This document shows, piece after piece, positions 341 through 32,712 of a DNA stretch of 64,000 bases. Each line of letters opens with the position of its first letter. Position 1 is the first letter of the stretch. The position numbers and the translations under genes are program-made. The notes below the pieces were generated by a model that worked only from the letters and a program-made list of their open reading frames with translations, did not search any database and was not told the DNA's origin. Source of the stretch: Macrostomum lignano (Eukaryota); the NCBI GenBank assembly GCA_002269645.1, contig NIVC01001816.1:124001-188000 (forward strand). The letters run 5' to 3'.

Positions 341-7561
<7,221 letters not shown>

Positions 7562-9277: not shown

Positions 9278-12200
9278 TTAATAGATGATGCAATCCAACG
9301 GTCGCTTCCGTCCCAGCTTAGTCCAGACGAGCTCGATCAACAGGATGAGCAGGCCGATGGTGTACAGGCAGCCCGTGATCAGCAGGCAGCCGCTTACGCC
9401 TTCCAAACTGATGCCGTCGGCCTCCGTGGATCTGCCGTCTCCTTTGCCGCAGTCGGTGAAGTTCTCTCTGGACCAGTAGAAATCGAAGAGTCTCTGCATC
9501 AGTCCAGACTCGTGCATCTTCTGCAAGCTGATGGGCGAGCGTTGATTGTGGACAAATTTAGCGTGGTTATTTTTAGCCTAGCGTAGCCTAGTGGTCTAGC
9601 GTAGCCTAGTGGTCAAGCGTAGCCTAGCGGTCTAGCGTAGCCTAGTGGTCTAGCGTAGCCTAGTGGTCTAGCTTAGCCTAGTGGTCTAGCGTAGCCTAGT
9701 GGTCTAGCGTAGCCTAGTGGTCTAGCGTAGCCTAGTGGTCTAGCGTAGCCTAGTGGTCTAGGGTAGCCTAGTGGTCTAGCGTAGCCTAGTGATCTAGCGT
9801 AGCCTAGTGGTCTAGCGTAGCCTAGTGGTTTAGCGTAGCCTAGTGGTTTAGCGTAGCCCAGCGGTCTAGCGTAGCCTAGTGGCCTAGCTTAGCCTAGTGG
9901 TTTAGCGTAGCCCAGCGGTCTAGCGTAGCCTAGTGGCCTAGCTTAGCCTAGTGGTTTAGGGTAGCCTAGTGGTCTAGCGTAGCCTAGTGGTCTAGCGTAG
10001 CCTAGTGGTCAAGCGTAGCCTAGTGGTCTAGCGTAGCCCAGCGGACTCGCTTAGCCCAGTGGTATAGTGTAGCCTACATGTAGTGGTCTAGCGTAGCCAT
10101 TTGTTACAATGTTACAATTGTTACAATAGTAGCAAACTTATAGTAAACTAATAGTTAGTTTGTCAACTCCAATGGCAATCTTTTGAGCAACCGAAGCAAA
10201 TAACTGGGTAGCATAGGTCGTTAGCTAAAATTTTACTTGTAGTCGAACATTTGAGCATAGAAAGCGTCTTCCGAGTACATAAGCGCCACCGTAGATGGAT
10301 TGAAAGTCTCCGAGAGCATGTAGTACAAGGAGCAGTGCCTGATTGCTTGGCCCAACAGAAAGGTGTAGTCATTTATGCAGGCTGCGTCATTTTTCGGTGG
10401 CTGAGAAAAGTTTTGTTTTAGAACTTCCTTTAGTGACTTGGAACGTTTAATTTGCTTAGTGTCAACAACCCGAAACACGACAATTCAAGACTCACATTAT
10501 ACGGACAGTATTCTCCAGCTGGCATGACCACCATTGCGTCAGCGATTTGCTTGTAGATGCCTGACTCGGCAGTAGTGAGCAAGGTGTAATGGTTCGTGCC
10601 GGTTGGAACGTAGGGCTTAACAGCGGTTTGAGAGACCAGGTCTGTCAGGGTTTTGATCGGATAGTCCGTGACAGTCACAGTCAGGTGAGCAGTCAAGTCA
10701 CCTGTAATGATAATTAGGAATGGTAGTAGCTTATTACCCTAGAAATTAATTATACATTAGCTCATAAAAGCACTAGCAGACGCACCGGTAAAAGCTCCAA
10801 ATATGATCAAGGTAAACATCCACCAAAATGCCATAACAGTCCTTGGCGACATCGCAAACGGGTAGAAGTCCTGGCCCTGCTGCAGGAAGCTCCCGATAGC
10901 GCTCCAAATGTACTCATGCAGCCAGATCTCATCAGAAACTGCGTACTCAAGGCCCAAGTTGTAAGCCGAGAATGGAGAGTAGTAAGCAAGGACCCACATG
11001 ACAACTGAGGCGCATGCCAAAGTGCCTAGCAGGAGGTACCACACAGACGGACTCAACGGAGTAAAAATGTTCCACATCTTTGTGTCTGGTGGCGGTTTCG
11101 GCACCATGACTGCGGTGGATTGGTCGAACAGCGGCGTTGAGAAGTCGATAACGGAATCGCGAATTGAAGTCTTGGTGAAGGGGCCAGCTCCCAGGTGTGA
11201 GATCTGGACGCCGGGAAATCAGATATAAGCAAGTATAAATAACTGATATCATTCTTCACCGAAAAAAATCTTGAGAAAACATGACAGCCCACGCACTCCA
11301 CGCTGAAGCTCTCCGACACATCCTGAGAAGTAGGGTTTGCCTGCCTGGGGCGCACCCCAGTTACCGTCGTCAGGTGCCTTAGTGATGTATCTGCATTTTC
11401 AGGTAAAACTCCCATCCAACTTATACTTTAATAAGGCAGGTAATTAAGGACGACTATAAAAAGGTTACCTAAAATCCATTTTCTGAGCCAAAATGTCCAG
11501 CACATCTCGAGTCATTCCTCGAATAATCACAGTTTTGTTTGGGAACTCAGCAACAAAGTCTGTCATCGGAGAGGTCTGAAAAGTTAGAAGAAAACTCATT
11601 CATTTGATCTGAATGTTGAGATAATTTTGAGAGAAAGCTGCGGTTGAGAGAAATGCATTTCCAAAAGACATGTAGAACAACAAAAGAGATTTGTCAAAGT
11701 AACTAACTCTAGGGGTACACATAACCAAGGTCTGGTTCTTGAATCCCATGAAGGTGTTCGGGAATGCCAAGCTGACTCCCTTGTAGTGGAACAGCTTGCT
11801 CAGAGCTCCGCTCGATGCATCGAACTGAGCCGACCTCAGCATCGAGACCGGAGACGACCACAGCTCATTGTAGGACGCGACCACTTCGACTCGTTGCGAG
11901 CTGAAGTGTCTGGTCGAGCTGTTGAACGAGATCAGGCCTCGCTGAGTGTCATAGTCGCTGATCTGCACATCGAGTAGGGATTGGGGAGAGACCAGCTCGA
12001 AACTAATAATGCTTGTCAATGCTTGCTAGCTAGTGAGCTCACTCACACTCATGAGTCTGTTGAGCACAGTCGAGCCCGATGTCCAGTGGCGCAGAGGCGC
12101 ACACGAGGCGTTGCCGGGAGAGAATCCCGGATCCAGCAGCGAGTCGTTGAGCGCCTTGGCCATGGCTTCTACGGCGTCTACGAAGCGAGCGTCCAGAGTC

Positions 12201-13549
12201 TGTCGAATGCAAATGCGACGATCGAGTGCGACAGTGGCATGCGTTGCACACGTGCGGTGCTGCATGATGAATCCCTGCAGCCATCAAGCAGCACACATGA
12301 AACGCTCACCCGAAGCCAGTCCGTCTGGCACTGAGGAAACACATCCATCACTGCTGCTGTGCACTCGGTGAACACGCTGCCTCTCAGCAGAGCGACGTTC
12401 GCGTTCGCCGGCGTCACGCTGAGCACATCGGCCTTGGACAGTCCGGTGTCGAGCACGAGCCAGAAGTAGTTCTGCTGCATCACTGCAGCTTCACTGGCGA
12501 GCCTGAGCACACTGAGAGCATTGCGAGGAGAGGCGAGCAGCAGCAGCTTGAACACTTTCTTCTTGACCAGCCGCTTGAGGTGGTGCACCAGGTCAGGAGT
12601 AACAGAAGCGTTGACAGAGTCGTCCACTCGGAATGTGAGACTGCTCACACCGGCAGAGGAGAGACTGGACTGCAGGTTCTGCAGCATCAGTGAATCTGAA
12701 TCAATTTTATGGTTCGTATTATGTTAATATTTATAGCTAGAAAAAGTGCTACCGTATGAAACCTGACCCGAATACCGGAAAAAGTACATAAAATAAAGAT
12801 TTTGCAAAACATTCAAACCTTGTTTTTTATCGTAAAGCATGGCGACTTTGTTGAGTTCCGATTCGTCTTTGAATATGCTTGCCGCTGCGCGCATGATGTC
12901 GTGAGAGCTGTGTCTGGCTACCACAGTGTATCCTGCTATTTTTTAGGCAAGTTTAGATTGGCCAGCTTATTAATACTGAATGAAATTGTCAAAAGAACTT
13001 TAGAAGACAAGCTGCAGCATACCTTTGCTCAGCCGAGCAGAGTCGCACAGTCCAGTCGGCAGGGCGATCAGCGGCAGCTGCAGAGACTTGCTCAGTGAGC
13101 TCACTTCATCCAGTAGAGAGCAGCTGCCGACGCCAATCAGACCTGACAGGCCGCTCTTCGAGCACACTGCGGAGCGAGACACAGACACATGCACAGTTTC
13201 ACAGCTCGCACTCACACTTGCATTCGTACAATTCATGCTTCAATTGTGTGCATTGATTGAGCAGGTTGAGCAGAGCAGCGATTGAGTCGCGTAGCAAATG
13301 CTTCAACTCACCAGTCCTGACAGCCTGGTGTGAGCTGCACGAGCTCACATTGACATGCACATATGAGAGTGTGTGGCCCTGCAGCACTCTCCAGTTGTAG
13401 TTGACCCGTCTGGCGAAGGCGACGTCGATGAGCGAGCTGTTCAAGTTTCCGGCCTCCGTGATCACGCCAACTCTCAGGTCCAGGGCGGATGAGCTGCCCA
13501 GATAAACTGAGAAGGCAGTGACTATTGCTAACACGCGTGCAACTGCCAT
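9278..13549 (-). CDS. Ionotropic glutamate receptor-like subunit, paralog A (signal peptide, ATD, S1, M1-M3, S2, M4); 12 exons, 842 aa
   Basis: Exons 13549-13312, 13166-13023, 12932-12819, 12695-12310, 12199-12047, 11962-11708, 11575-11469, 11390-11297, 11203-10786, 10701-10496, 10400-10237, 9527-9278 sum to 2529 nt, all GT-AG and in phase. Motifs: DGNWG...GCVGELQRG, GPFTKTSIRDSVIDFSTP, WSAIGSFLQQGQD (pore), WWMFTLII, LQKMHESG..QRL...YW, C-terminal M4. The exon 5 acceptor has an alternative in-frame candidate ~85 nt upstream. Confidence 0.9.
9576..10098. repeat. 18-bp minisatellite in last intron of iGluR paralog A
   Basis: Unit CTAGCGTAGCCTAGTGGT; period 18 between 9581 and 9599. Confidence 0.95.
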
Positions 13550-14269
13550 TACTTTGGAGTTAGTTGATTAGTAGCTCGTAGAGTTGATTGTATTTGGATT
13601 CACATGCAAGGTCTTTTTATATAGGGATATCAGCAGCCAATCAAGTCCAAGTCAGCTACCGTTGGAAATAACTCTCAGGCAGTTTCCATCGCTTACTTTA
13701 TTTTTATATAGCTTGCGAAGATTTTTAAGTTCACTTATCATGCCGATTCTGGTTTTCAGTAATGTAAAAGAGTCTTCCTTAACTTCTTTTGCAGTTGAAT
13801 AGCAGAAATAACTTTGCCTGTGCACAAATATGTGTGCTTCTGCGTGCTGAGGGTTCAGCAGAACCAGTTTGAATGCTTGTATCCTCGGCGGCTGCGGGAT
13901 CCCCTGTCACGTGTGATTTGCAACAGTGCTCCAAGCCTTCCTACAGACTAACCAACTAATAATTCATCGCAAAAAACGTGACAGAGCGTCAAAGTTATTT
14001 AGTACTTGTTGACAAAATTTCTCCCGCGCATATCTCCTTTTGTAAAGTTAATGAATCTTAGTCATAGGTAAGAATTGAAACCTTCAAGCATTTAGGTATA
14101 TGCACTGTACTTGATAGTCTGATAGATTGACAGATTTTGCTATTAAATGTGCCACTGATTGACTGGAAGAAATCATTGGGTCATTGTAGAAGCAGTTTGC
14201 GTCAAATTTTAGCCCAAGCTATTTAAGTGCTGATGCACTAAATTCGCCAAATTTATCAGTGCAGCAGTG

Positions 14270-14505
14270 TATGTATGTGTGTGTGTGTGTGTGAAGCCAG
14301 AGTCTGTCGCTGACACGTCCATCAGTTGCTGCCGACTGCATCCACATCCGGCCCGCGCCCCAGCTTGGCACGCAACCATTTCCAGAACTTGGTGACTCCT
14401 TGCTCCTTGCTGTTCAGGTCCCGCATGCAAAGCAGCCCGAGTTCCTCGCGTCGGCTCCACGTGGCCGGACACTCCACCAGATGCTCAAGGGTCTCGCTCG
14501 CTGAG
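14270..14505 (-). mobile_element. 3' end of a 5'-truncated non-LTR retrotransposon (host of the nested insertion), with (CA)n tail
   Basis: Minus strand continues the reading from 20333 as ...SASETLEHLVECPATWSRREELG...GSN*, then a short UTR and a (CA)n/CATA tail at ~14270-14293. AGTGCAGCAGTG at 14258-14269 recurs at 20535-20546 (candidate 12-bp TSD). Confidence 0.75.
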
Positions 14506-14980
14506 GCCGGGGCTGTTGCCCCCAGGACCCCGGGTCCTGCACGTAATGGCGTGGTGAACTATCTGTGCAGTATGAGACTGGTATGGCCTTTATCCCAGCC
14601 AGCGATGCTCACACCTGCCTCCCCTGGCGGGCTGATAGCTCAAGAGACTCTGTCTCCTGATTTTCACCTTGCAGGGCGCACTTCGAAGGGTACTCGTCCC
14701 GTGGGTGTTAAGGCAGGCCCCCTTGGGCCCTGCCGAGCTGATTCGTTGGCGCCGGGTCCTGGTGTGACCATAAACGCACCCTCTAATGTCCCAGTGTAAC
14801 TCCGTGCTGATGGACGCTTGGCCAGGGAGTAGTCTGGTCGCTAACGGTTCCCCTTGCGCTTTTGGGTCCCCCGCAGGGTGGTATTTTGCTTTTTGGGGGC
14901 CTGCCGCTTGGTTTGGGGTTGCGGCCTTGCGGCTCCTTGCCTGTGTTCTGCAGGAAGTCCCACCTTTTTACTTCCAGCCA

Positions 14981-16501
14981 ATGGCTTCTAACCGAAGTAA
15001 CAAACCGGCTGTGGATGACACAGTGCCTCCGGCCTCGGCTGGGGCCGTGGACTCCTCGGCCATACCACCTGCTACCATCGGGGACGCCTCGGCGAGACCC
15101 GTGGAGCCAACTCTGAGCGGTGCCTCCGAGAAGACACCTGCTACTCCAGCTGCTAAGAAACGCAGCACCACCTCTGGAGCTGCCCGCCGTCGACTTAACA
15201 AGGCGAGGCGGGCCAAGGAGGGCGGAAGCCAAACCGGTGCCAGGGGCCAACGGCCCGCGGCAGCGGAAGCTTCCCAGTCTGGGGCGGTGGCGGAAGAGGG
15301 CCTCGAGCCCACGGAAGCCCCTGCCCAGGATAGGGAGGCCGATGCAGCCGGGAGGGTGGACAGCCCACCTGAAGAAAGCTCCACTGACCCCCGGGCCTCC
15401 TACGCTGATGCGGCAAAGAGGCAACCGGCGGTTGTCATCCTGGGAAAGGACGCGCGCCTGTCTCCCGATCAGCTGAAGCAGGTGAGAAGTGCCGTTGATG
15501 GCCTCCTGTGGAAGCAAACTCTGAAGGGCACGCCTCTGAACATTCATTCGAATGCGACGAGGGACTCGTGCCTTCTCATTTGGCCCAGTGATGCTGACTC
15601 GGGTCGGCGGCTCCTTGAGCTGCTGCCCGAGCAGAGCTGGGACCTCAACCTAGCCTTCTGCAGAGAGGACGAGCGCCCCCGGACCAAGAGGCATCGAATC
15701 TGGGTCCCGGCCAGGAGCGTTGTTACCTCTGCTGACGAGCTCCGGAAAGGACTGCTAGCAGTCAACCGGGAGCTTCCCGCCGCGGGCCTAGTGGTGCATG
15801 ACACCCTTAAGCGCACCGACGGCACTGGCTTCACAGCCATCCTGGGGCTGTCGGACGCCTGGATGAGGCGTTATCCACACGGCAGCTTCATCAACGTCGG
15901 CCTTTGGAAGCTGCGCATCCGCTCCTACGAGGCCGACCCTCCCCGTGGCAGTGAGCAGGGCGGGCGGGATGCGGAGGCGGCCGGGGCCGAGGCGCAAGCC
16001 TCTGCTCAGACTGCCAAAGCAAACCGCCCTGCCCGGCAGCACGGCCGCACGGGCAAAGCTGAGCGCGCTGCTGAGGGCGGAGGCGACCGACGCCCGGCGC
16101 GCAGCACCAAGCGGCGCGGCCTGTACCAGCGTGCAGCTGAGGCAGTCCGTACCGCCAAAATCTCCCAGCTGAGGCGAGAGGTCGCCGGGACGCCTAGGCG
16201 CACCAGTTCGTCCAGGGAGGGTGGGGACGTCCCAGCTGGGCCCAACCCCTCGGGGCAGGGCCGACTGGAGACGGACCCGCCTGCCCAGGCGGCTGGCTGC
16301 TCCAGGGCATTGGGCCAATCTGAGGCGGAGGACCCCATGGATGGTGGGCAAAGGGCGGCGAACGCTGCCTACTGCCTTCCGGCCAATCGGGGGCCTTTTG
16401 CTGAAGAAGAGCCCATGGACACCGGCGACCCCGACCCGAAGCCGGTGAGCGCCGAGGAGGAGGAGGAACTCCTGGCGGCTGCAACATCCGATCTGCAATG
16501 A
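14981..16501 (+). CDS. Non-LTR element ORF1 (gag-like, DUF4780-like core, no CCHC knuckle)
   Basis: Long ORF with SYADAAKR motif and RIWVP...GLLAVNREL...LGLSD...INVGLWKLRIR core. Its TGA overlaps the ORF2 ATG (ATGA at 16498-16501). The in-frame ATG at 14981 was chosen as start. The domain name is from recollection, not a search. Confidence 0.75.
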   Translation: MASNRSNKPAVDDTVPPASAGAVDSSAIPPATIGDASARPVEPTLSGASEKTPATPAAKKRSTTSGAARRRLNKARRAKEGGSQTGARGQRPAAAEASQSGAVAEEGLEPTEAPAQDREADAAGRVDSPPEESSTDPRASYADAAKRQPAVVILGKDARLSPDQLKQVRSAVDGLLWKQTLKGTPLNIHSNATRDSCLLIWPSDADSGRRLLELLPEQSWDLNLAFCREDERPRTKRHRIWVPARSVVTSADELRKGLLAVNRELPAAGLVVHDTLKRTDGTGFTAILGLSDAWMRRYPHGSFINVGLWKLRIRSYEADPPRGSEQGGRDAEAAGAEAQASAQTAKANRPARQHGRTGKAERAAEGGGDRRPARSTKRRGLYQRAAEAVRTAKISQLRREVAGTPRRTSSSREGGDVPAGPNPSGQGRLETDPPAQAAGCSRALGQSEAEDPMDGGQRAANAAYCLPANRGPFAEEEPMDTGDPDPKPVSAEEEEELLAAATSDLQ

Positions 16502-19500
16502 TGCCAGCGACTACCTGGTGTCTGCAGATCAACACCCAGCACTGCGTGGCGGCGTCGGTCAACCTGATGCGCACGGCAGAGCAACAGCTTCCGGGCCTGG
16601 TCTTCGTACAGGAGCCCTGGATGACTAAAGGTAAGCCAAATAATGTGCCATCTGGCTACCACTGTTTTTGCATGGCGGGCTCTCAGCCTCGCCCAAGATC
16701 TCTGGTCTTTGCTGCAAAAGCTTTTGAGGCATGGATGAGACCTGATCTCTCGACTGGGGACATCTGTGTTGTTCAAATCAATAACCTCATTCCCAATAAA
16801 CCTGTGCTGGTAGCTTTTGCCTATTTCCCGGGCGATGCCCCAGTTGTCTGCGACGCGTTAGTCAACCTTACTGACTATGCTGCGTCCCATCGGTTCGAGC
16901 TGCTCATTGCAGGGGATGTGAACGCACACCACCTGCATTGGGGCAGCAAGAACATCAATAGCAGAGGCGAGGAGCTGCTGGCCTATGTCAGCAGCACTAA
17001 CCTCAACTTCTGTAACGTGGGCAATGCACCAACGTTCAATAATGGGCGGTGGGCCGAAGTCATCGACACCACCATCGCCTCACCCGGACTGCTTTCCGCA
17101 GTTACGGGCTGGCGAGTGTGGGACGAGGACTCGCTCTCGGACCACCGCTTTATCCGCTTTTGCATTGGGCCGACCAAGCAAAAGCCTAAGGTCACTTGGA
17201 GTCGGAACGTCAGGAACACCGATTGGGCCGCCTTTGGCTCGAAGCTGAGCCGCGGCCTTCGGGATCTTGACCCCCCCAGTGACCTCTCTGACTGCCAGGT
17301 GGTGGACGATCTCGCCTCCTCCCTGGGCGGGGCGATCACCACTGCCTTTGAAGCAGCCTGCCCCCTAAAGGCCTATAAAGGCAAGAAATCTGCTCCCTGG
17401 TGGAACCCAGAGCTCGGGGCCCTTCGGCGCCGAGCCAGGACCCTCCAAAGGCGAGCGCTCAAAACCAAAGACCCATCTGACAGAGAGGCCTATACCCGTG
17501 CGATCCACGAGTTTAAGGGCCAAGTCAGAAGGGCCAAGACGGCCAAGTGGCGCCAATATTGCGAAGGGCTTGAGGGCTCTCGCCCCGTAGCCCGCGTGGT
17601 TAAGGCACTCACTAATGACCGTTTTTCTAAACTCTCTGTTGTGAAGAGACCTGACGGCTCGGTCACAGAGAGTTCGGAAGAGACTCTAGAGCTCATGCTC
17701 AACAGTTTTTTCCCTAAATCTCCGACTCAGCAGGGCCCGCCGACCACACAGTGGGAGGGCAAGGCCTAGCAAAGTCTATGATCACCAAAGACCGCATTAT
17801 TAGAGCGGCAAGGTCCTTTAACCCGTTCAAGGCGCCTGGGCCCGACGGCATCTACCCAGCGTTCTTGCACGAGGCGGTGAAAAACCACCGCTTCCTGGAC
17901 CTGCTCTGTCGTCTCCTTCGAGCTTGTATGGAGCTGGGCTATGTACCAGTTGCATGGAGAGAGGCCCGGGTGGTCTTTATCCCCAAGCCTGGAAAGAGCG
18001 ACTACCAATCGGTGAAGGCCTTCAGGCCTATCAGCCTCACTTCTTTCTGCCTCAAGCTCCTCGAGAGACTGGTGCTTTGGCGCCTACTTTCGGTCGAGCT
18101 GAAGCGCTTCCCACGCTCGCAGAACCAGCACGCCTTCCGCGCGGGCAGGTCAACCGAGAGTGCTCTCCATGTCATTGTTGACTTCCTGGAGAGGGCCGTT
18201 CTTGGCAGCGGCTTTGCCCTCTCGCTTTTCCTGGACATTGAGGGGGCCTTCGACAACGTCATCTTCGAGGCCTTTTGCAGAGCCCTGGAATCCAGGGCCA
18301 CGCACCCTCACCTTGTCCGGTGGATCATGTTCATGATCCGAAACCGCACTGTTGTGGCCCACCTGAGCGGCAGCTCTCTTTCGGTGCCTGTCCTGAAAGG
18401 GGGCCCCCAGGGCGGCGTTCTCACCCCCGTTCTCTGGAACATGGTCATGGATGAGTTGCTTTGCAGTGATCTCCACGACCCCATTCTCAAGGTGGGCTAT
18501 GCCGATGATGTGACCGCGATATGCGCGGGCCCCTCGGTTGATACCATCAGAGACCTTCTGCAGGGCTTTCTGGGACGAGCGGAGCGTTGGGCAGACCAAT
18601 GTGGCCTTAGACTCTCAGAGTCGAAAACCACAGCAGTCATGTTTACCAACAAACTGCTCTGGACCATTAAGCCCCTCACCCTCTATGGAAAGAATATTTC
18701 CATGGAGAAGCAGGTCCGCTGCCTGGGCCTCACTCTGGACCACAGGCTTAACTGGACTCCGCACATTCAAACTAAAGCCAAAAAAGCCCTGGCTGTACTG
18801 GCTCAGATCAGGCGCGCCGTGGGCACCACCTGGGGGCTCACCCCCAGGAAGCTGTGGTGGATTTACACTGCCATCATCCGCCCCTCGATCAGTTACGCCA
18901 GCCTCGTGTGGGCTAGCGGCCTGAGCGTCAAGAGCAACCTCGACGCTCTCTACAAAATCCAGGGCAGAGCCTGCCGCATGACTATGGGCGCTCCACCCTC
19001 TACTCCTTTTGAAGGCATGAATGCCTTCCTCTGTGCCCCTCCTTTGGATATTTATATCAAAGGAGAGGCGGCGAAGAGCACCCGGCGTCTTCTGGATGCT
19101 GGGGTGGCCTTCAAGAAAGTGCGGGCCTTTAAGAAGCGGTCGCTTATCCCGCACTCTGACCTCTGCCTCAAGGCTCTCGAGGAGTGTGGCGGGCTCAACA
19201 TCCTCACGGACTCGATCCCAGCCACCCTTCTCCTGAGCCAAAGGTATAAGGTCACCATTCAGCCTCGACACGAGGCGAGTGACAGCTGGAGCGACTCTGA
19301 AGTCCACTGTTACACTGACGGCTCTATGAGGCATGGTCTTTCAGGCTTCGGAGCTTGCGTCTTCTTCAAGGGAGAAGTGGTGTGGAGCTACTCCCAGCAC
19401 ACTGGGCTCAACTCCAGTGTTTTTCAGAGCGAGGTGCTTGCCATCAGCTCCTGCGCGGCAGAGCTGCGCCGAAGGCAGCTTAGCGGCCGGAAATTTATTT

Positions 19501-20201
19501 TTCACTCTGACAGCCAAGCAGCCCTTCGGGCCCTCTGCCGCAGCACCGCCAGCTCCAGATCCGTCCTGGACGGCAACACCCAGCTCAACGGGCTTGCGCT
19601 AGGCAACCAGGTGGAGCTCAGATGGATCCCGGGCCACGCCGGCTTCCTCGGCAACGAGCGCGCTGACCTGCTGGCCAAGGCTGGCTCCGCCGGCGCGCTT
19701 TTGGGGCCGGGCCCGGGTGCCCCCATCCCCGCCTCGGTGATCAATTCCCGCGTTAAGCGCTGGGCTGACTCCGAGCATCTCCGCAGGTGGCACGACACCC
19801 GGAATTGTAGGCAATCCCGTGCTGCCGTCCCCTGTCCCTCTCCTCTCCTGCGTAGAGCCCTCCTCAGGCTCAACCGCAGAGACCTCAGAGCAGTTAGCAT
19901 GGCCCTCTCCGGGCATGGCTGCTTCTCTCGCCACCGCTTCCTTCAGGGCCAAGTACCCGAGGAGCGGTGCCCCTTCTGCCGCTCAGGCAGTGAAAACGCC
20001 GAGCATTTTATCTGCCACTGCCCGGTTTTCACCAGGGCCAGGCTTACTCACCTCGGGCCAAACCCGGTTCTCTCCGACGTTTGCAGGCCCGAGAGCATCC
20101 CGCTGCTCGCCCGGTACCTCAGGGACACCGGACGAGCTGATTTCTTCCCCACCGTCGGTGAGGAGGACCGCGCTGCAGGCGAGACCGACGGGTCCCCCTG
20201 A
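16498..20201 (+). CDS. Non-LTR element ORF2: AP endonuclease, reverse transcriptase, RNase H, C-terminal zinc knuckle; one frameshift near 17718-17769
   Basis: APE motifs VQEP, GDVNAHH, IDTTI, SDH. RT motifs KAPGPDG, FRPISL, QHAF, LDIEGAFD, PQGGVLTP, YADD, CLGLTLD. RNase H motifs YTDGS, SEVLAI, SDSQAAL, WIPGH..GNERAD. Knuckle CPFC...H..CHC. Split between ORFs 16498-17769 and 17751-20201. Confidence 0.95.
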
Positions 20202-20332
20202 GCGACACCACTTCAACGGAAGTCGTTGGTCGCCAGGGGCTAGCGGAATGGGCGGTCTCCTCCGCCTCCTCGCTGCATCCGCCGGACGCCCCCTGCAGCT
20301 AAGTCAAGCTAAGTCAAGTCTCGCTCGCTGAG

Positions 20333-20534
20333 CCGCACAAGAAGCAGTCCTCCGCGATTTCCTGGCCGATGCTGGGGCGGTATGCAGCCAGGTCCAGGGA
20401 AGTGACCGGTCCGGAACCGTCTGCTTCCGGACTGCCTCCTGACAGCAGCACTGCCTCCACACCTCCTCGTGGTGTGGTGTGGTTTCGACTAAGGGAGGCA
20501 TACCAGAGTCTAATGCTGACATTGTGAGTATGTA
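20333..20534 (-). mobile_element. 5' part of the truncated host LINE interrupted by the LOA-like element
   Basis: Minus strand reads RRFRTGH/(1-nt frameshift)SLDLAAYRPSIGQEIAEDCFLCGSASET, which joins across the 15-bp TSD to LEHLVECP, forming a complete C-terminal CCHC motif. Confidence 0.75.
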
Positions 20535-22094
20535 AGTGCAGCAGTGAAGCGTGCAACTCTGGAGAAGAATCATACGTGTTGTCAACGCCCAATAGAGAAC
20601 TTTGTTTAAATTTAATTGCATAGATTTATCTGGCGTTGCTCAACTGCATGTAAATTTCCGCAAGGTTAGGCTAAACATGGCTCTACAGCCACGCCCAAGC
20701 AGGCAGTTAAAGCATTGAAGGCATTCGGCTGTCTTTAGGAAATTTAATCGCTGATTTAAACAGATACTGCTGATGACATCAGCTCAACCTCCTGCTGCTA
20801 ATGAAGCTGACTGTTTTTTTACTTCATTAGTTTTCCCTGTTCGTACTGCCTGACCTGACTTTGATAATAGGGCCTGTCCCGTGTGGTGTCCCTTAGACGC
20901 TATGTCTCTTGTGCTGATGATATACCCTAAAAGAACGTTTTTTCGGAGCTTGTTTTGTGCATTCGAGTGCAACAGCAGAATAGGTTCTGCTCTGATTTCT
21001 ACACATTAATTGCTAGATTTTATTTTATATAATCCATAATGCAAATGCTATAGGATTACAGACCAGCTGCCAAAGTCTTCCGATCGAACTATAAATTGAC
21101 TCGATTCCGAAATGCAGTCTAAATTCTGTGCCTTCGAGTTTAGAGAACTGTCTCAAAGCTCGGGGGCCACTTTTGAGATAGAAAATGTTTGGTTAAGCAA
21201 GTTGGTAGCTTTAACTTCATCTTATATTCAGTTCTCAGTCATTGTTTAGTTATAATTTTTGGAGTGCTACCATACACTTTCTAATTATGGTTCTCTAGAA
21301 GTTCTTTTGAGGTAATTTTTACCGTCAGTGACTTATAATTCAATGATTATTGATAATTTTTTCAACCTGCTATCAGATTCAGACAGTAGGATTCTACATG
21401 GACTAAGAGAAAAACATGGCAAGCCTGCTTTCGCAAAGCGTCCACAAAACCGTGGAGGTCAGAGAAGATGTATCCCTGACACTGACTTAGTGGATGGATA
21501 AGGCTTTACATATCCTTCGATCTTAAAACTAGAATTTCGGGACAGTAAACGCTTGACCGATATTTGGCCTTCCGATGATGGTAAAATGCGCAGCATCTTG
21601 CACGTTATTTGGGGGGGGGTAGTAGAAAGTGAAGTTAACTTCTGTTCGACTATAGTTGGTACTTTTATAGTGCTTCCCGTGATGAATTTCAGCAAGAAAT
21701 CTCTGACAAAGTTTCAAATTAAAAAATCTTACTGCTGAGGATCAAGTATTTTACCTACTGACTCGAGAAGATTGAGACACAATGGAAGTTCTAGCAATAT
21801 TCTTCAAAGATATGATAAAATCCAGAATGCAACTTCCCTTAGATTTCAACTTCTCAATCATTATGTAGAAAAATTATTTCTGTCTCGTGGTGCACTTAAT
21901 AGTCAAAATATTTCAAATGATATTATGAAATATGCAATCAACACCCTCGAAGTGCAAATTTAATAAACATAATATAAGCTGCTTCCAGTAAACTGAAAAT
22001 GTTGATGTTAAAGCACGTTCTAACTACGCAGTGCAAAGTTATTATCTAATGTTGGATTTGTCGTCCAAACGTAGCCTAATATTTGAAATTTTAA

Positions 22095-25000
22095 TCAATA
22101 GAAGAAGCAATCCAGCGGCTGCCTCTTAGCCAGCTTAGTCCAGACAAGCTCTACCAATAGAATCAGCAGTCCCAGGCCGTAGAAGCAGAGAGTCGCTATG
22201 AAGCACCCACCAGCGCTCTCCAGGCTTATAGCGTCGGTTTCGGCAGAGCTGCCAACAGAGCAGACTGAGTCGCTGGACCAGTAGAGCTGGAACCAGCGCT
22301 GCAGTTGGCCAGTTTCGTGCAGTTTCTGCATGCTGCAAATAGAGTTAAACAGAATTCGGAACATGTTCTTCATTTGGTACTACTGAACAGTAGGATCACC
22401 TAAGCAGAGTCCTAGGTTCACCTAGCGAATGTCAATGTTTTCCTCGTTACATCTGAGTGGATTTTTTGTCCTAAAATATTTGTGCCTTTCTCTGCGCGTA
22501 ATCAATTTCTAATAAGGAATCGAAACAGCAAGGAGTAAAAAGTGAGTTTATGCTCCCGACTCTCTACTTTTTAAGGAAGATTGAAACTCACTGGAAGTTG
22601 AACAGTTCCGCATAAAACGCGTCATCCGGTAGCATCAAAGCAATTGGCGCAGTTAAAAACAATTCTTCGGCCATGTAAAATTGAGTACAATTCTTTCTGG
22701 CTATGTTTAGCAGGTAAGTGTAGTCCGTGAGGCAGGCCTGGTTAGGATTTGGCGGCTAAAAATGGGTTCGAAAATTACCAGATTAGTATGACAAACTGCT
22801 TCGTAGGTTATTTACGATGGCTGAGTAATTGACGACAGTAAGCTGAAATTCAAGTCAATTTGAGCTCATGAAAGTGAGATCTCGTTAATACTTTACCGTG
22901 CCCCCTGTTCCTGCTACACCGATACAAGCGTCAAACAATGCAATACAATGATCGAGTCGCTCACATCTGTCGGACAGTCATCGTAAGGCCCCAATTCAAC
23001 CATACTCTCGGTGATTTTCTTGTAGACACCAGATTCCGCGTTCAAAAGCAGAGTGTGCAGACTTGTACCAGCAATTACGTAGGGTCTGATTTCTGTTTGT
23101 CCTGTCAAATCGTCCAGGGTCTTGATGGGATAGTGCGTCACAGTCACCGTCAGGTGGGCCGTCAGGTCGCCTGAAATGACGCGAAGAAGATTCATTGCGG
23201 TTCGTTTTTCGTTTTCTTTTAGTACATTTTGTTCTGATTGAAAACAGAATTGAAGTATTGGTAGACGATCATTTTTTATTTTGCACTTTTGTCTAGTAGA
23301 GAATTTTCAATGAGGCTGCTCTCCAACGGAAACATTTTTTTCTTTTTCCTTTTAAAGCTGTCGCAGATCAAATGGACGCTGGTGTCACTTCAAATTTCCG
23401 TGTCAGTCGTACTTGGTACATCGTTGTTGTAGGGGCGTCCACCAAGAGACAGGGGCGCCTACCAAAACACCAAATATTGGCCCCTTTGTGTTACGCTCCC
23501 CCTACAATTAAAACTCTGCACACGCCATCGCTTTGAGCACAAAAGTGCCTATTGGTGAGTTTGTGGTTCAAACTAGCTCTGTAAAGCTATAGCTAACGAT
23601 TTGCGTTTGACTACTGCAAAGTCGTTTTGTAATAACTGATCAAGCCGTCTCACCGTTGAATGCGCCACAAATAATCACGGAAAGCAGCCACCAGAACGCC
23701 ATGGCTGTTCTAGACGACATTGCAAACGGATAGAAGTCTTGGCCCTGTTGCAGAAAGCTGCCTATCGCACTCCACAGGTACTCTTGAAGCCAGACCTCAT
23801 CAGCTATGGCAAACTCAAGATTCAAGTTGTAGGCTGTAAACGGTGAAAAATAGGCCAGGACCCAAGTGGCAAAGGTGGTGACAAACAGAGCTGCAACAAT
23901 TGAAAGCCAGACGCTCATAGTGAAAGGTGAGAACACTCTCCATAGTTTAGACTCTGGAGCCGGCCTCGGCAATAAAATAGCGTTCGATTCTTCAAACAGA
24001 GGAACGGAGAAGTCAATGACCTCGTCACGCGCTGCGGTGATGGTAAACGGACCGGCAGCAACTGCAACTTCCTGTAAATCGTTCCAATTGAAGTGCGCTG
24101 TGCATTATCTTTTATTTAGTCTATGGCGGAAGGCTTTAGACAACTGCAATCAAGGCGACAATGTCCGTCAGGCAGCCATGCAGTCAAGCCCATTTGCTGA
24201 CACCTGAGCACACACGTGCACACAGATACGACATACTCTGCTCCTCAGGGTATTACCCCCATGTGCTGGGCAAGAATCGCCCCAAGCACCAGGCCAGTTT
24301 TCTTTTGGAAGAGCCTTAAATTAATGTGGTCGAGCAAGGAATCAAACCTGGGCACTCTGTCACAAGAGTCAGGGGCGTTGCATACTCTTGGTCATTGGGG
24401 GGAAAGTACTATTGCATTCGTAAACAGTGGCAAAACTACTGTTAATAGCGATATGCGCTCAAGACGACACACAAATCTTGTAAGCGTCCTACGTTGTATA
24501 TGAGATCTGGCCTCTGTGAAGAAATTACGAAGCTACTGCAGACGTTTGTAGCAATAAAAAATCATGTGAAATTTATCGATTAAGGTCATAAAACACTTCG
24601 GTCACCTACTCACCCCTCTCTGCAACTCGCCAACGCATCCGTTAAAGTAGGTTGAGTTGACTTCAGGCGAGCCCCAGTTTCCGTCTGTCGAATCTTTCGT
24701 TAAAAATCTTCAACGTTTCGTCATAATAAAACTAGTACATATACTTATAAAAACAAGAAAAATACGAATGTAAGAATTATATCACCATACCGAAAGTCTA
24801 ACTGCGTTGAGAAGTATTCAAGGATGCTCAAAGTCATTCCGCTGATTATTACTGTCTTGTTAGGAAACTTCTCGACAAATACAGTCATTGGAGCGCTCTG
24901 TATGTTATTGTAGGTTATTGGTGAAAACGTTAGTACGATTTTACGTTCCTAAAAAATTATTCACAAAGTAAAGGCACAAACCTCGGGAGAGCAGACAATG

Positions 25001-26846
25001 ATGGTCTGGTTCTTGAAACCCATGAAGGTGTTCGGAAATGCCAAGCTGACTCCCTTGTAGCGGAACAGCTTGCTCAGAGCTCCGCTCGATGCATCGAACT
25101 GAGCCGACCTCAGCATCGAGACCGGAGACGACCACAGCTCATTGTAGGACGCGACCACTTCGACTCGTTGCGAGCTGAAGTGTCTGGTCGAGCTGTTGAA
25201 CGAGATCAGGCCTCGCTGAGTGTCAAAGTCGCTGATCTGCACATTGAGTAGGGATTGGGGAGAGACCAGCTCGAAACTAATAATGCTTGTCAATGCTTGC
25301 TAGCTAGTGAGCTCACTCACACTCATGAGTCTGTTGAGCACAGCCGAGCCCGATGTCCAGTGGCGCAGTGGCGCACACGAGGCGTTGCCGGGAGAGAATC
25401 CCGGATCCAGCAGCGAGTCGTTGAGCGCCTTGGCCATGGCTTCTACGGCGTCTACGAAGCGAGCGTCCAGAGTCTGTCGAATGCGAATGCGACGATCGAG
25501 TGCGAGATCGAGTGCGACAGTGGCATGCGTTGCACACGTGCGGTGCTGCATGATGAATCCCTGCAGCCATCAAGCAGCACACATGAAACGCTCACCCGAA
25601 GCCAGTCCGTCTGGCACTGAGGAAACACATCCATCACTGCTGCTGTGCACTCGGTGAACACGCTGCTTCTCAGCAGAGCGACGTTCGCGTTCGCCGGCGT
25701 CACGCTGAGCACATCGGCCTTGGACAGTCCGGTGTCGAGCACAAGCCAGAAGTAGTTCTGCTGCATCACTGCAGCTTACCTGGCGAGCCTGAGCACACTG
25801 AGAGCATTGCGAGGAGAGGCGAGCAGCAGCAGCTTGAACACTTTCTTCTTGACCAGCCGCTTGAGGTGGTGCACCAGGTCAGGAGTAACAGAAGCGTTGA
25901 CAGTGTCGTCCACTCGGAATGTGAGACTGCTCACACCGGCAGAGGAGAGACTGGACTGCAGGTTCTGCAGCACTGTTGTGCCTGCAGTGACCAAATGCAG
26001 ACTTGAATCATCGTGGGAGTACAATCACGTGCACAAGTGTGTATTTAGATAAAAATGATGTCTGATTATACAACGAAAATGCGAACGTCGTATTTTACTT
26101 TATTCACAGCACTCACTTTGCAGACCATCGTAGAAAACTGCCACACTGCTAATTATGGAATCCGAGGTAACAATGGAGGCAGCTGCAGCGACGATGTTTT
26201 CTGAGCTGTGGCTGCCCACGATTGTCATGTCTGCAATTCCGCGTGATTTTTACTTCAAAACCAGACATCTAGAGAAATGGTAAAAAGATACCAGACATCC
26301 ATCTCTGTTACCTTTGCTCAGCCGAGCAGAGTCGCACAGTCCAGTCGGCAGGGCGATCAGCGGCAGCTGCAGAGACTTGCTCAGTGAGCTCACTTCATCC
26401 AGCAGAGAGCAGCTGCCGACGCCAATCAGACCTGACAGGCCGCTCTCCGAGCACACTGCGGAGCGAGTCACACAGACACATGCACAGTTTCACAGCTCGC
26501 ACTCACACTTGCATTCGTGCAATTCATGCTTCAATTGTGTGCATTGATTGAGCAGGTTGAACAGAGCAGCGATTGAGTCGCGTAGCAAATGCTTCAACTC
26601 ACCAGTCCTGACAGCCTGGTGTGAGCTGCACGAGCTCACATTGACATGCACATATGAGAGTGTGTGGCCCTGCAGCACTCTCCAGTTGTAGTTGACCCGT
26701 CTGGCGAAGGCGACGTCGATGAGCGAGCTGTTCACGCTTCCGGCCTCCGTGATCACGCCGACTGTCAGGTCCAGGGCGGATGAGCAGCCGACTATTACTA
26801 ACCAGTAAACAAAGGCTACTTCTTTTACTGTCTTTGATGTTGTCAT
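22095..26846 (-). pseudogene. Ionotropic glutamate receptor-like paralog B; same 12-exon layout as A, one in-frame TAA at 25776-25778 (pseudogene, splice-rescued gene or assembly error)
   Basis: All exons recoverable with the same phases as A: MTTSK...SSALDLTVG, exon 3 DMTIVGSHSSENIV, SAPMTVFVEKFPNKT, DGNWG..GCVGELQRG, GPFTITAARDEVIDFS, WSAIGSFLQQGQD, GAFNGDLTAHLT, ACLTDYTYL, QKLHETG, M4. The only lesion I found is GCC AGG TAA where A has GCC AGT GAA. Confidence 0.8.
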
Positions 26847-31461: not shown

Positions 31462-31904
31462 AAGCATTGAAATTTCAGTAATTCTCTCTGAGAGTCATTA
31501 TAGCACTACTACAGCATTATAGCGATTCCCTGCAAGCCTCGACATCGTAGGGATTCCCAAATGAATCTCTTAACTTCGACATGAAGCTTCTTTTATTTTT
31601 TACATTACGCTTTTTTATCAGCGCCCCCCCCCGTGGCGAGCCAACAAAGAATGCAATAAAAAATTGAGTAAAGTACATGAACTTTGAAATAGCCTCTGAC
31701 TATTGCTTTGACATCTCAGAAACCCCCCCCCCCGTAATCTAAGTTATTCTCTGAGAGCCTTGACATCTCAGTAATTCTCCCCAGCACAGCATTATAGCTT
31801 CATTTAATTTTTACATGACACCCTTCATGTCTGACATGACGCTTCTTTTATTCTACCATGATGCTTCTTAATATTTTAAATGACACTTTCATTACTTTTT
31901 AAAT

Positions 31905-32712
31905 GAGGCTTCTATGATTTTTTCATGACGCTTCTATGATTTTTACATGACGCTTCTATGATTTCTTACATGACGCTTCTACGATTTTTAAGATGACGCT
32001 TCTATGATTTTTTAAATGACGCTTCTATGATTGTTTACATGGCGCTTCTATGATTGTTTACATGACGCTTCTATGATTGTTTACATGACGCTTCTATGAT
32101 TTTTTACATGACGCTTCTATGATTGTTTACATGACGCTTCTATGATTGTTTACATGACGCTTCTATGATTGTTTACATGACGCTTCTATGATTTTTTACA
32201 TGACGCTTCTATGATTGTTTACATGACGCTTCTATGATTTTTTAAATGACGCTTCTATGATTGTTTACATGGCGCTTCTATGATTGTTTACATGACGCTT
32301 CTATGATTTTTTAAATGACGCTTCTATGATTTTTTCATGACGCTGCTACGATTTTTTACATGACGCTTCTATGATTGTTTAAATGACGCTTCTATGATTG
32401 TTTACATGACGCTTCTATGATTGTTTACATGACGCTTCTATGATTGTTTACATGACGCTTCTATGATTGTTTACATGACGCTTCTATGATTGTTTACATG
32501 ACGCTTCTATGATTTTTTACATGACGCTTCTATGATTGTTTACATGACGCTTCTATGATTTTTTAAATGACGCTTCTATGATTGTTTACATGACGCTTCT
32601 ATGATTGTTTACATGACGCTTCTATGATTTTTATACGATGCTTCTATGATTTTTTAAATGACGCATCTATGATTTTTATATGACGCTTCTATGATTTTTA
32701 CATGACGCTTCT
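31905..32712. repeat. 20-22-bp satellite (CATGACGCTTCTATGATTTTTA) in unit A
   Basis: Directly visible. Confidence 0.95.

What the first reader, a model, noticed from the sequence alone, without database searches (positions are those of the whole stretch)
11728..26786. Patchwork homogenisation of two iGluR paralogs: ATD nearly identical, ligand-binding and channel halves strongly diverged
Seen: A 11728-12685 vs B ~25005-25972, and A 13021-13495 vs B ~26310-26786, are almost identical including introns 1, 4 and 5. Signal peptides, exon 3 with its flanking introns, and everything from S1 to M4 differ heavily, with unalignable introns. The tracts begin right after the signal peptide (SSALDL), stop at the exon 2 donor, resume a few codons into exon 4 and end at the ATD-S1 linker (KNQT). 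Established: ATDs steer iGluR subunit assembly. Inference: recent DNA-level gene conversion confined to the ATD, possibly keeping the subunits co-assembling while ligand specificity diverges.
Basis: partly seen in the sequence, partly recalled or inferred. Interest (0 to 1): 0.7.

Follow-up and report, generated by a model that had tools for sequence, protein, structure and literature searches.

The report
Shared receptor head kept identical by gene conversion
Two neighbouring glutamate-receptor-like genes of the flatworm Macrostomum lignano share a nearly identical outer domain, introns included, because a family of at least eight such genes keeps copying that segment between members while the ligand-binding and channel parts stay very different; this is a clear but ordinary kind of gene conversion in a gene family where it had not been reported.

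Summary
On the minus strand lie two 12-exon iGluR genes of Macrostomum lignano: A (9278-13549) and B (22095-26846). Two tracts are about 97.5% identical, introns included. Everything else is 53-66% identical in exons and unalignable in introns. Synonymous divergence is 0.02 inside the tracts and saturated outside.

Gene conversion limited to the amino-terminal domain (ATD) is the right mechanism, but it is not a private A-B event. At least eight M. lignano genes with different signal peptides, and at least five different ligand-binding halves, carry the same ATD core (0-9 differences in 342 residues). A and B are no closer to each other than to those genes. Shared polymorphisms fail the four-gamete test.

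A second subfamily in another assembly shows the same mosaic: 98-99% identity over 1.5 kb, ending within two codons of the same ATD/S1 junction. GC3 and intron GC are raised inside the A/B tracts, which fits repeated GC-biased conversion.

Copy B carries one in-frame TAA inside the tract. The co-assembly idea remains untested.

Verdict: real, family-wide, domain-bounded concerted evolution. It is a new member of a known kind, closest to regional conversion in protocadherin clusters. Moderate interest.

The parts
9278..13549 (-). Gene A: a 12-exon ionotropic glutamate receptor-like gene with an intact 842-codon ORF. Exons, listed high to low: 13549-13312, 13166-13023, 12932-12819, 12695-12310, 12199-12047, 11962-11708, 11575-11469, 11390-11297, 11203-10786, 10701-10496, 10400-10237, 9527-9278.
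   Evidence: Manual splice model with GT-AG at every intron. Pfam hits to ANF_receptor, Lig_chan-Glu_bd and Lig_chan. Best PDB matches are GluD1 and GluK2, E about 1e-40. UniProt A0A1I8H6T5 (P0021) is identical over exons 5-12 where it is modelled.
22095..26846 (-). Gene B: a paralog with the same 12-exon structure, 840 codons and one in-frame stop. Exons: 26846-26603, 26455-26312, 26230-26117, 25981-25596, 25473-25321, 25236-24982, 24897-24791, 24707-24614, 24071-23654, 23170-22965, 22755-22592, 22332-22095.
   Evidence: Splice model. UniProt A0A1I8H5G6 (P0001) matches its C-terminal half at 95-99%. P0018 and P0027 match its N-terminal half.
13020..13498 (-). Homogenised tract 1 in A: distal exon 1, intron 1, exon 2 and 3 nt of intron 2. 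It encodes the start of the ATD, including the stretches aligned with helices B and C.
   Evidence: 97.7% identity to B 26309-26789. Alignment. dS 0.023. Five of its nine substitutions lie in the first 55 bp, giving a frayed 5' edge.
26309..26789 (-). Homogenised tract 1 in B.
11729..12686 (-). Homogenised tract 2 in A: exon 4 from its 10th nt, intron 4, exon 5, intron 5, and exon 6 up to ...FPNTFMGFKNQT. It covers the rest of the ATD up to the ATD/S1 junction.
   Evidence: 97.4% identity to B 25003-25972. dS 0.022. Intron GC is 0.49-0.57, against 0.25-0.41 in introns outside the tracts apart from A's minisatellite-bearing intron 11 (0.50).
25003..25972 (-). Homogenised tract 2 in B.
12687..13019 (-). 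Unconverted island in A: intron 2, exon 3, intron 3 and the first 10 nt of exon 4. The exon 3 sequence is unique to A among the known family members.
   Evidence: Exon 3 is 53% identical at nt level and 45% at aa level to B, with dS 2.0. The flanking introns have GC 0.30-0.34. Family alignment.
25973..26308 (-). The corresponding island in B. Its exon 3 is of the type shared, at about 75-100% aa identity, with family members C-H.
25776..25778 (-). In-frame TAA in exon 4 of B (codon 236), where A and the family members aligned have GAA (Glu).
   Evidence: No other disabling lesion was found in B. P0027, a B-like copy in UniProt, has the intact ...LRLAREAAV....
25506..25517 (-). 12-bp tandem duplication (TCGCACTCGATC) in intron 4 of B. 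It is the only long indel inside the tracts.
14300..20500 (+). Non-LTR retrotransposon (LINE) lying between the two genes, antisense to them, with GC about 0.6. It is not part of the homogenised DNA.
   Evidence: Pfam hits to Exo_endo_phos_2, RVT_1 and RNase_H on ORFs 16405-17766 and 17718-20198. GC profile.

Best explanation
**What it is**
- A and B are two tandem members of a Macrostomum lignano iGluR subfamily.
- The amino-terminal domain (ATD) of this subfamily evolves in concert through repeated non-allelic (interlocus) gene conversion. The rest of each gene evolves independently.

**How it works**
- Homologous-recombination repair of breaks in the ATD-coding DNA uses another family member as template.
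- This copies a few hundred to about 1,500 bp, exons and introns alike.
- A tract can only start and finish where donor and recipient are still alike.
- So exchange is confined to the existing homology block. This holds for the signal-peptide exon end, the LBD/channel half and, in gene A, the exon-3 island.
- Once a flank has diverged, the edges keep themselves sharp.

**Shown here**
- The DNA-level mosaic.
- The family-wide sharing of the ATD core.
- The reticulate pattern of shared polymorphisms.
- The same 3' edge in a second subfamily.

**Inferred**
- The process is old and recurrent. The basis is the raised GC3 and intron GC in the tracts, as expected from GC-biased conversion.
- Selection against homogenising the ligand-binding domain, and perhaps in favour of a common ATD, helps to fix the edge at the protein-domain boundary. 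That edge lies 21 nt upstream of the exon boundary.
For: **1. The tracts are DNA-level copies**
- They are 97.4-97.7% identical and include three introns.
- dS is 0.02 inside, against saturation outside.

**2. The tracts are internal to the gene**
- Both ends of each tract lie inside the gene. The 5' exon part, the promoter side and the 3' half are unrelated.
- A simple duplication or a single crossover therefore does not fit.

**3. ATD and LBD divergence disagree**
- LBD+TMD identity: A-B 0.56, A-O 0.55-0.57.
- ATD identity: A-B 0.91 including exon 3, A-O 0.50.

**4. The sharing is family-wide**
- Eight different N-termini (A-H) and at least five LBD types (A-E) carry the same ATD core.
- They differ at 0-9 of 342 residues.
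- Identity drops to 55-64% in the 74 residues just after ...KNQT.

**5. The pattern is reticulate**
- All four combinations occur at site pairs 219/361 and 172/361.
- The S/L polymorphism at position 361 segregates within gene types C and D.

**6. Independent replicate in assembly GCA_002269645.1 (locus L001)**
- O2 is 98-99% identical to O1 and O3 over 1.5 kb of ATD, introns included.
- Identity then falls to 45-66%. LBD aa identity is 0.70.
- The edge is at GFKN|, within two codons of the A/B edge.

**7. GC content**
- GC3 is 0.75 inside the tracts, against 0.56-0.62 outside.
- Intron GC is 0.49-0.57 inside. Outside it is 0.25-0.41, apart from A's intron 11 (0.50), which holds an 18-bp minisatellite.
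- Raised GC3 is the same criterion used for protocadherin regional conversion (PMC1852091).

**8. Tandem order in an older annotation**
- P0032, a fused B+A model in the UniProt set, shows the same B-then-A order.
Against: - DNA of the other A/B-type family loci could not be fetched. Family-wide sharing therefore rests on predicted UniProt proteins from a fragmented assembly. Some of those models are fused or truncated.
- The GC shift is strong in the A/B tracts but weak in the O cluster: intron GC 0.33-0.44 inside against 0.26-0.44 outside.
- No reads were available, so base-level errors cannot be excluded. This includes the TAA in B.
- Conversion cannot start between sequences as different as A's exon 3 is from the family's. 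The island therefore needs an extra assumption: early escape, selection, or replacement from an unknown donor.
- Whether selection or homology limits alone set the edges is not resolved.
Confidence: 0.85

Rival explanations
1. A single recent conversion event, or two, passed directly between the neighbours A and B. No other genes were involved.
For: A and B lie 8.5 kb apart in the same orientation, and proximity favours exchange. The two tracts have the same divergence, 2.3% and 2.6%, as one event would give.
Against: In the core tracts A-B differ at 8 of 342 residues. Each differs from unlinked family members (C, D, F, H, B2) at only 4-9. C, D, F and H are closer to each other (0-5) than A is to B. 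Most A-B differences are private changes away from a family consensus. Four-gamete violations show several exchanges.
Confidence: 0.08
2. Chimeric genes arose by unequal crossing-over or exon shuffling. One ATD-coding 5' half was joined to different LBD/channel 3' halves and the products then duplicated. No ongoing conversion is involved.
For: The family sits in tandem arrays. This is seen in the window for B then A, and in fused models for E then H and F then G. The 3' edge is the same in all members and lies next to a motif conserved across subfamilies, FPNTF-GFKN.
Against: A crossover would also carry the promoter and signal-peptide exon, yet each gene has its own and the 5' edge lies inside exon 1. 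No two genes were seen to share an LBD half, which such crossovers would produce. A has an internal island. Polymorphisms are shared reticulately. GC is raised specifically in the tracts.
Confidence: 0.06
3. Assembly or polishing artefact. Reads of one paralog overwrote the other in the consensus.
For: M. lignano is highly repetitive and partly polyploid, and this window is full of satellites. No reads could be examined.
Against: The same mosaic is in proteins predicted from a different assembly and annotation (P0018, P0021, P0027, P0032). The same kind of mosaic is in GCA_002269645.1 for the O genes. Polishing cannot turn about 55% identity into 97.5% with sharp in-frame edges. The tracts retain 22 substitutions and 2 indels, so they are not a collapsed copy.
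Confidence: 0.02
4. Extreme purifying selection on the ATD protein, without any DNA exchange.
For: The ATD core protein is nearly invariant across the family.
Against: Introns 1, 4 and 5 are 98.6-99.1% identical, and synonymous divergence is 0.02 against saturation next door. Within the tracts dN/dS is 0.5-0.9, which is not strong constraint.
Confidence: 0.01

Closest known systems
Regional gene conversion in clustered protocadherin genes of teleosts and mammals (Noonan et al. 2004; Yu et al. 2007, PMC1852091)
   Same: - Tandem paralogs of a neural surface receptor share one segment at over 97-99% nucleotide identity.
- The remaining segment stays divergent and defines each paralog.
- GC3 is raised in the homogenised part.
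- The homogenised part distorts trees.
- From my own knowledge: the homogenised protocadherin part contains the promiscuous cis-interaction domain (EC6). The iGluR ATD is likewise the assembly domain.
   Different: - Here the unit spans several exons with their introns rather than part of one large exon.
- The homogenised part is N-terminal.
- The family is an ion-channel family in a flatworm.
- At least some members lie in different arrays.
- One member (A) keeps a 333-bp unconverted island inside the block.
Concerted evolution and escape from it in classical tandem families (globins, opsins, RHD/RHCE, MHC, KIR). Cited from my own knowledge.
   Same: Interlocus conversion tracts of 0.1-2 kb. 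Mosaic genes. Edges that sharpen where flanks have diverged. A stop codon in one copy can be erased or spread by the next conversion.
   Different: Those cases mostly involve 2-5 genes. The tracts rarely coincide with a whole protein domain across eight or more paralogs and across two subfamilies.
iGluR superfamily with ATD-guided subunit assembly (AMPA, kainate, NMDA, delta receptors)
   Same: - Same domain order: ANF_receptor ATD, S1, M1-pore-M3, S2, M4.
- 12-exon genes.
- QQG pore motif.
- S1 arginine present (..SIRDSVIDFS..).
- The closest solved structures are GluD1 and GluK2.
   Different: - Only distantly related to any vertebrate class (E about 1e-40, roughly a quarter of residues identical).
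- M3 reads AFTGDLTAHLTV instead of SYTANLAAFLTV.
- The acidic residue that binds the ligand's alpha-amino group is G in A and N in B. In the GluD1 alignment it corresponds to D in AFLWD. It varies among paralogs.
- The ligands are therefore probably not classical, and they probably differ between paralogs. This is an inference.

Membership tests
Ionotropic glutamate receptor superfamily (genes A and B) | LIVBP-like amino-terminal domain (Pfam ANF_receptor) | tested here: met
   PF01094, E 2.7e-18, residues 48-360 of A.
Ionotropic glutamate receptor superfamily (genes A and B) | Bipartite S1/S2 ligand-binding domain interrupted by a channel with M1, re-entrant pore loop and M3, followed by M4 | tested here: met
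   PF10613 (residues 446-534) and PF00060 (549-813) hit A. A aligns end to end with GluD1 and GluK2 chains. B has the same exon structure and motifs.
Ionotropic glutamate receptor superfamily (genes A and B) | Conserved M3 gate motif SYTANLAAF | tested here: inconclusive
   A reads AFTGDLTAHLTV and B reads AFNGDLTAHLTV. The motif is recognisable but diverged.
Glutamate/amino-acid-gated iGluRs (ligand class) | S1 Arg plus S2 acidic residue that bind the alpha-carboxyl and alpha-amino groups of the agonist | tested here: not met
   The Arg is present (SIRDSVIDFS). The position aligned to the GluD1 Asp in AFLWD is G in A (TFLLG), N in B, A in C and Y in O. This rests on sequence alignment only.
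Interlocus gene conversion / concerted evolution | Near-identity of a segment at synonymous sites and in introns, next to saturated flanks | tested here: met
   dS is 0.022-0.023 in the tracts, 2.0 in the island and saturated downstream. Introns 1, 4 and 5 are 98.6-99.1% identical.
Interlocus gene conversion / concerted evolution | Phylogenetic discordance between the segment and the rest of the gene | tested here: met
   ATD identity A/B/C/D is 0.90-0.97 and 0.50 to O. LBD+TMD identity is A-B 0.56 and A-O 0.55-0.57.
Interlocus gene conversion / concerted evolution | Both ends of the tract internal to the gene (non-reciprocal patch, not a crossover product) | tested here: met
   Tract ends lie at A 13498, 13020, 12686 and 11729, all within the transcription unit. 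The upstream region, signal peptide and 3' half are unrelated.
Interlocus gene conversion / concerted evolution | Repeated exchange among several paralogs (shared polymorphism, four-gamete failure) | tested here: met
   Tested at protein level only. Site pairs 172/361 and 219/361 show all four combinations among A-H.
Interlocus gene conversion / concerted evolution | GC enrichment of converted DNA (GC-biased conversion) | tested here: met
   GC3 is 0.75 in the tracts against 0.56-0.62 outside. Intron GC is 0.49-0.57 in the tracts against 0.25-0.41 outside, apart from A's minisatellite-bearing intron 11 at 0.50. The effect is weak in the O cluster.
Interlocus gene conversion / concerted evolution | Species-wise clustering of the converted segment when orthologs of sister species are added | not testable with these tools
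   No other Macrostomum species appeared in the protein searches.
Processed or unprocessed pseudogene (copy B) | Disabling lesion in the reading frame | tested here: inconclusive
   There is one TAA at 25776-25778. All splice sites are intact and there are no frameshifts. A B-like UniProt copy (P0027) is intact at this codon. It may be a very young lesion, a variant of one copy, or a base error.

The most novel reading that the evidence does not exclude
This flatworm iGluR family is built like a constant-plus-variable receptor set.
- One ATD is held identical across eight or more genes, in tandem arrays found on more than one contig.
- It is held identical by conversion whose edge is kept by selection at the ATD/S1 domain junction.
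- That edge is the same, to within two codons, in two subfamilies whose ATDs are only 50% alike.
- The shared ATD would act as a common assembly or anchoring module.
- The ligand-binding halves lack the amino-acid-binding acidic residue and vary at that pocket position. They would diversify as chemosensor-like units.
- Gene A's exon-3 island has survived between two converting blocks long enough for dS to saturate. It would then be a selected, subunit-specific patch on the ATD.
Probability: 0.3. Interest if true: 0.65.

Novelty: new member of a known kind. Interest (0 to 1): 0.5.

Why it matters
**For iGluR biology**
- ATDs are known to set which AMPA, kainate and NMDA subunits pair. A family in which many subunits carry the same ATD but different binding pockets predicts free mixing of subunits, or a shared extracellular partner.
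- That prediction can be tested by expression.

**For genome annotation and phylogenetics of M. lignano**
- The homogenised 1.4 kb will mislead any tree, ortholog call or read or transcript assignment that includes the ATD.
- Fused and truncated UniProt models of these genes (P0014, P0015, P0032) are probably a consequence.

**For evolutionary genetics**
- It is a clean example of domain-bounded concerted evolution with a GC-bias signature, in a recently duplicated flatworm genome.
- It includes a case where a nonsense codon sits inside a converting tract, and so can be either repaired or spread.

Tried and rejected
1. **Fetching DNA of the other family members.** P0012 is not on record, and only NCBI-annotated O-type genes could be fetched. 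Family-wide identity of introns in the A/B group therefore remains unverified.
2. **L002, a second copy of the O locus.** The window of DNA starts inside the ATD and has a 9.4-kb block between ATD and the rest. It gave no further replicate.
3. **AlphaFold2 model of a family ATD (P0017) from a 7-sequence alignment.** Mean pLDDT was 33 and pTM 0.19. It was discarded and no fold search was run. The placement of helices B and C (exons 1-2) and of the next strand-helix-strand (exon 3) rests on the HMMER alignment to GluD1 and on general knowledge of the LIVBP fold.
4. **Functional RNA in the conserved introns.** There were no Rfam hits in the whole window.
5. **A way to splice around B's TAA.** The substitution creates CAG|GTAAGC. 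No downstream AG restores the frame at a plausible intron length (checked by hand on the and 14 sequence). Rejected.
6. **Literature.** Three searches found no report of gene conversion in iGluR ATDs or in M. lignano receptor families.
7. **Purifying selection alone, and assembly artefact.** Both were considered and rejected (see rival explanations).


Full report
**1. What is in the window**

The region belongs to the flatworm Macrostomum lignano. UniProt A0A1I8H5G6 (P0001) matches the 3' half of one gene at 95-99%. P0021 matches the other gene, and all close database relatives are from this species.

Two genes lie on the minus strand, B upstream of A.
- I built both models by hand from GT-AG sites and reading frame.
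- A runs 13549-9278: 12 exons and an intact 842-codon ORF.
- B runs 26846-22095: 12 exons and 840 codons.
- Exons 2-11 have identical lengths in the two genes (144, 114, 386, 153, 255, 107, 94, 418, 206, 164 nt), with the same phases.

A is a typical iGluR.
- It hits ANF_receptor, Lig_chan-Glu_bd and Lig_chan.
- It aligns end to end with GluD1 and GluK2 chains at E about 1e-40.

Between the genes lies a GC-rich LINE on the other strand, at about 14300-20500. It has APE endonuclease, RT and RNase H domains.

**2.

BLASTN gives two matches:
- A 11729-12686 vs B 25003-25972 at 97.4%.
- A 13020-13498 vs B 26309-26789 at 97.7%.

Identity per feature:

| Feature | Identity |
|---|---|
| Intron 1 | 98.6% |
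| Exon 2 | 98.6% |
| Exon 4 | 96.9% |
| Intron 4 | 99.1% |
| Exon 5 | 98.7% |
| Intron 5 | 98.8% |
| Exon 3 | 52.6% |
| Exons 7-12 | 56-66% |
| Introns 2, 3, 6-11 | 40-56% (noise) |

- The first tract starts at the end of the signal peptide (SSALDL) and stops 3 nt past the exon 2 donor.
- The second starts 10 nt into exon 4 and stops after ...FPNTFMGFKNQT, 21 nt before the end of exon 6.

Inside the tracts there are 22 substitutions: 12 non-synonymous, 6 synonymous and 4 intronic. There are also two intronic indels of 2 and 12 bp.

Synonymous divergence is 0.022-0.023 in the tracts, 2.0 in the exon-3 island, and saturated downstream (pS 0.80). The longest identical run in the spliced CDS is 175 nt, against at most 65 nt in 10,000 permutations.

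**3. It is DNA exchange, and it is limited to the ATD**

Intron and synonymous-site identity rule out protein-level constraint.

Both ends of each tract lie inside the gene. Each gene keeps its own upstream region, signal peptide and 3' half. The pattern is therefore a non-reciprocal patch, not a duplication or a single crossover.

Divergence of the two halves disagrees.
- After the KNQT edge, A-B identity is 0.56. That is the same as A to a different subfamily, O (0.55-0.57).
- In the ATD, A/B/C/D are 0.90-0.97 identical, and 0.50 to O.
- A's exon 3 is 45% identical to B's, which is the depth expected for an unconverted ATD.

**4. It is not a private affair of A and B**

A search with A's ATD returned M. 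lignano proteins with eight different N-termini. They are A, B, and those I call C to H.
- All carry the same ATD core from ...SLIDVAFARR... to ...GFKNQT.
- Where the models continue, the ligand-binding halves differ. In the 74 residues right after the edge, A, B, C and D are 55-64% identical. A fifth type (E) is 48-49% identical in an S2 fragment.
- In the 342 core residues, A and B differ at 8 positions. Each differs from the other family members at 4-9. C, D, F and H differ among themselves at 0-5.
- Most A-B differences are private departures from a family consensus. This includes B's TAA where the other aligned members have GAA, and A's AGT where they have AGG.
- Several polymorphisms are shared across gene types, and pairs of them show all four combinations (positions 172/361 and 219/361). 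This is what repeated exchange among many members produces.
- Fused gene models place B before A (P0032), E before H (P0014) and F before G (P0015, P0016). The family therefore sits in several tandem arrays.

Caveat: these are predicted proteins from a fragmented assembly. I could not fetch their DNA.

**5. An independent replicate with the same edge**

The one family relative with NCBI annotation (P0034) led to locus L001 in assembly GCA_002269645.1. It holds three genes of subfamily O.
- O2 is 98-99% identical to O1 and O3 over 1.5 kb, from the last 35 nt of exon 1 through exon 6. All introns and exon 3 are included.
- Identity then falls to 45-66%, and LBD+TMD aa identity is 0.70.
- The edge is at ...FPNTFLGFKN|. 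That is within two codons of the A/B edge, again about 20 nt before the exon end.
- By alignment, the residues that follow (LVMCTPR.. in A, IRICSTE.. in O) are the first strand of S1. The edge therefore follows the protein-domain boundary, not the exon boundary.
- A further 98% patch of about 150 bp lies in exon 9 of O2.

**6. Signs that the process is old and recurrent**

- GC3 is 0.75 in the tracts of both genes, against 0.62 (A) and 0.56 (B) elsewhere.
- Introns 1, 4 and 5 have GC 0.49-0.57. The introns flanking exon 3, only 100-300 bp away, have 0.30-0.39. Introns 6-10 have 0.25-0.45.
- Raised GC3 is the criterion used for repeated regional conversion in fugu protocadherins (PMC1852091).
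- In the O cluster the shift is slight, so I treat this as supporting evidence, not proof.
- Conversion needs pre-existing homology. The simplest history is therefore continuous homogenisation of the ATD since the genes arose, with other segments escaping and diverging. It is not a recent invasion of a diverged gene. This is inference.
- On that view, A's 333-bp island (12687-13019) has stayed unconverted between two active blocks long enough to saturate dS. That needs selection for A's own exon 3, a heterology barrier, or replacement from an unknown donor. No similar donor was seen among the known relatives.

**7. Function**

By the GluD1 alignment, exons 1-2 encode the stretches corresponding to helices B and C. 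Exon 3 encodes the following strand-helix-strand.

In AMPA receptors the NTD dimer-affinity determinants lie largely in helices B and C (PMC7619101). The homogenised DNA therefore includes the canonical assembly surface.

An AlphaFold model meant to check the mapping failed (pLDDT 33) and was not used.

In the ligand-binding domain:
- The S1 arginine is kept.
- The acidic residue that holds the agonist's amino group is G in A, N in B, A in C and Y in O.
- This suggests non-classical ligands that differ between paralogs. This is inference.

B in this window has one TAA in exon 4 (25776-25778) and no other defect.
- A B-like protein in UniProt is intact at this codon (P0027). Two others have an odd local sequence there (P0018, P0032).
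- B may be a very young pseudogene, one variant copy, or a base error.
- Either way, a working A-B pair is not shown.

**8. Comparison and verdict**

The closest known case is regional gene conversion in clustered protocadherins. There a shared segment is over 99% identical among tandem paralogs, the rest is divergent, and GC3 is raised (PMC1852091).

The mechanism here is the same. The new elements are:
- the gene family;
- the multi-exon unit with its introns;
- the coincidence of the edge with a domain junction in two subfamilies;
- the internal island in one member.

Searches of the held literature found no report of this for iGluRs or for M. lignano.

I rate it a real feature and a new member of a known kind, of moderate interest. 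It is higher if selection on a common ATD can be shown.

Noticed in passing
window 25776-25778 (minus strand, exon 4 of B): There is an in-frame TAA inside the homogenised tract. The other aligned family members have GAA. It is the only defect in B. The same base change creates a consensus-looking donor, CAG|GTAAGC.
   Followed up: partly
L001 (GCA_002269645.1 NIVC01000067.1:181593-219642), about 3500-7200, 9988-13100, 24150-27800: Three genes of a second iGluR subfamily (O1-O3) show the same ATD-only homogenisation. O1 and O3 are themselves patchy (80-100% per 100 bp). O2 has no recognisable exon 1 upstream of the tract, which starts 35 nt before the exon 1 donor.
   Followed up: partly
L001 12271-12400 (exon 9 of O2): A short patch, about 150 bp at 98-99% identity to O1 and O3, lies in the channel-coding exon. 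It is surrounded by DNA at 60-83%. It is probably a separate small conversion tract.
   Followed up: no
L002 (NIVC01000845.1) 613-9992: The second genomic copy of the O3 gene has about 9.4 kb of unrelated DNA between ATD exon 4 and the rest of the gene. This is either an insertion or an assembly join.
   Followed up: no
window about 14300-20500 (+): A GC-rich (about 0.6) non-LTR retrotransposon lies between A and B. It has an ORF1 (14774-16498), an endonuclease ORF (16405-17766) and an RT-RNase H ORF (17718-20198). The last two are in different frames, so this copy may be frameshifted.
   Followed up: partly
window 9578-10076 (intron 11 of A): An 18-bp minisatellite of about 28 copies (CTAGCGTAGCCTAGTGGT) makes intron 11 of A 709 bp long, against 259 bp in B.
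   Followed up: no
window 31834-32712 and 34388-42946: A large satellite with a 22-23-bp unit has about 380 copies. It carries a 2.06-kb higher-order duplication at 98.6% identity (34094-38297 vs 36157-40363).
   Followed up: no
window 593-1147 and 4710-5054 (+): These are exons of a secretin-family (class B) GPCR. One has a hormone-receptor domain and the other part of 7tm_2. They are interrupted by micro- and minisatellites.
   Followed up: partly
window 50744-52633 (-): Fragments of an LTR-retrotransposon pol gene (RNase H, integrase zinc-binding and core domains) lie in several frames within a GC-rich block.
   Followed up: partly
UniProt models P0014, P0015, P0016, P0032: Several database gene models fuse neighbouring family members or skip exons. 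They do so at the points where the homogenised ATD repeats. This shows the shared tract confuses automated annotation.
   Followed up: partly
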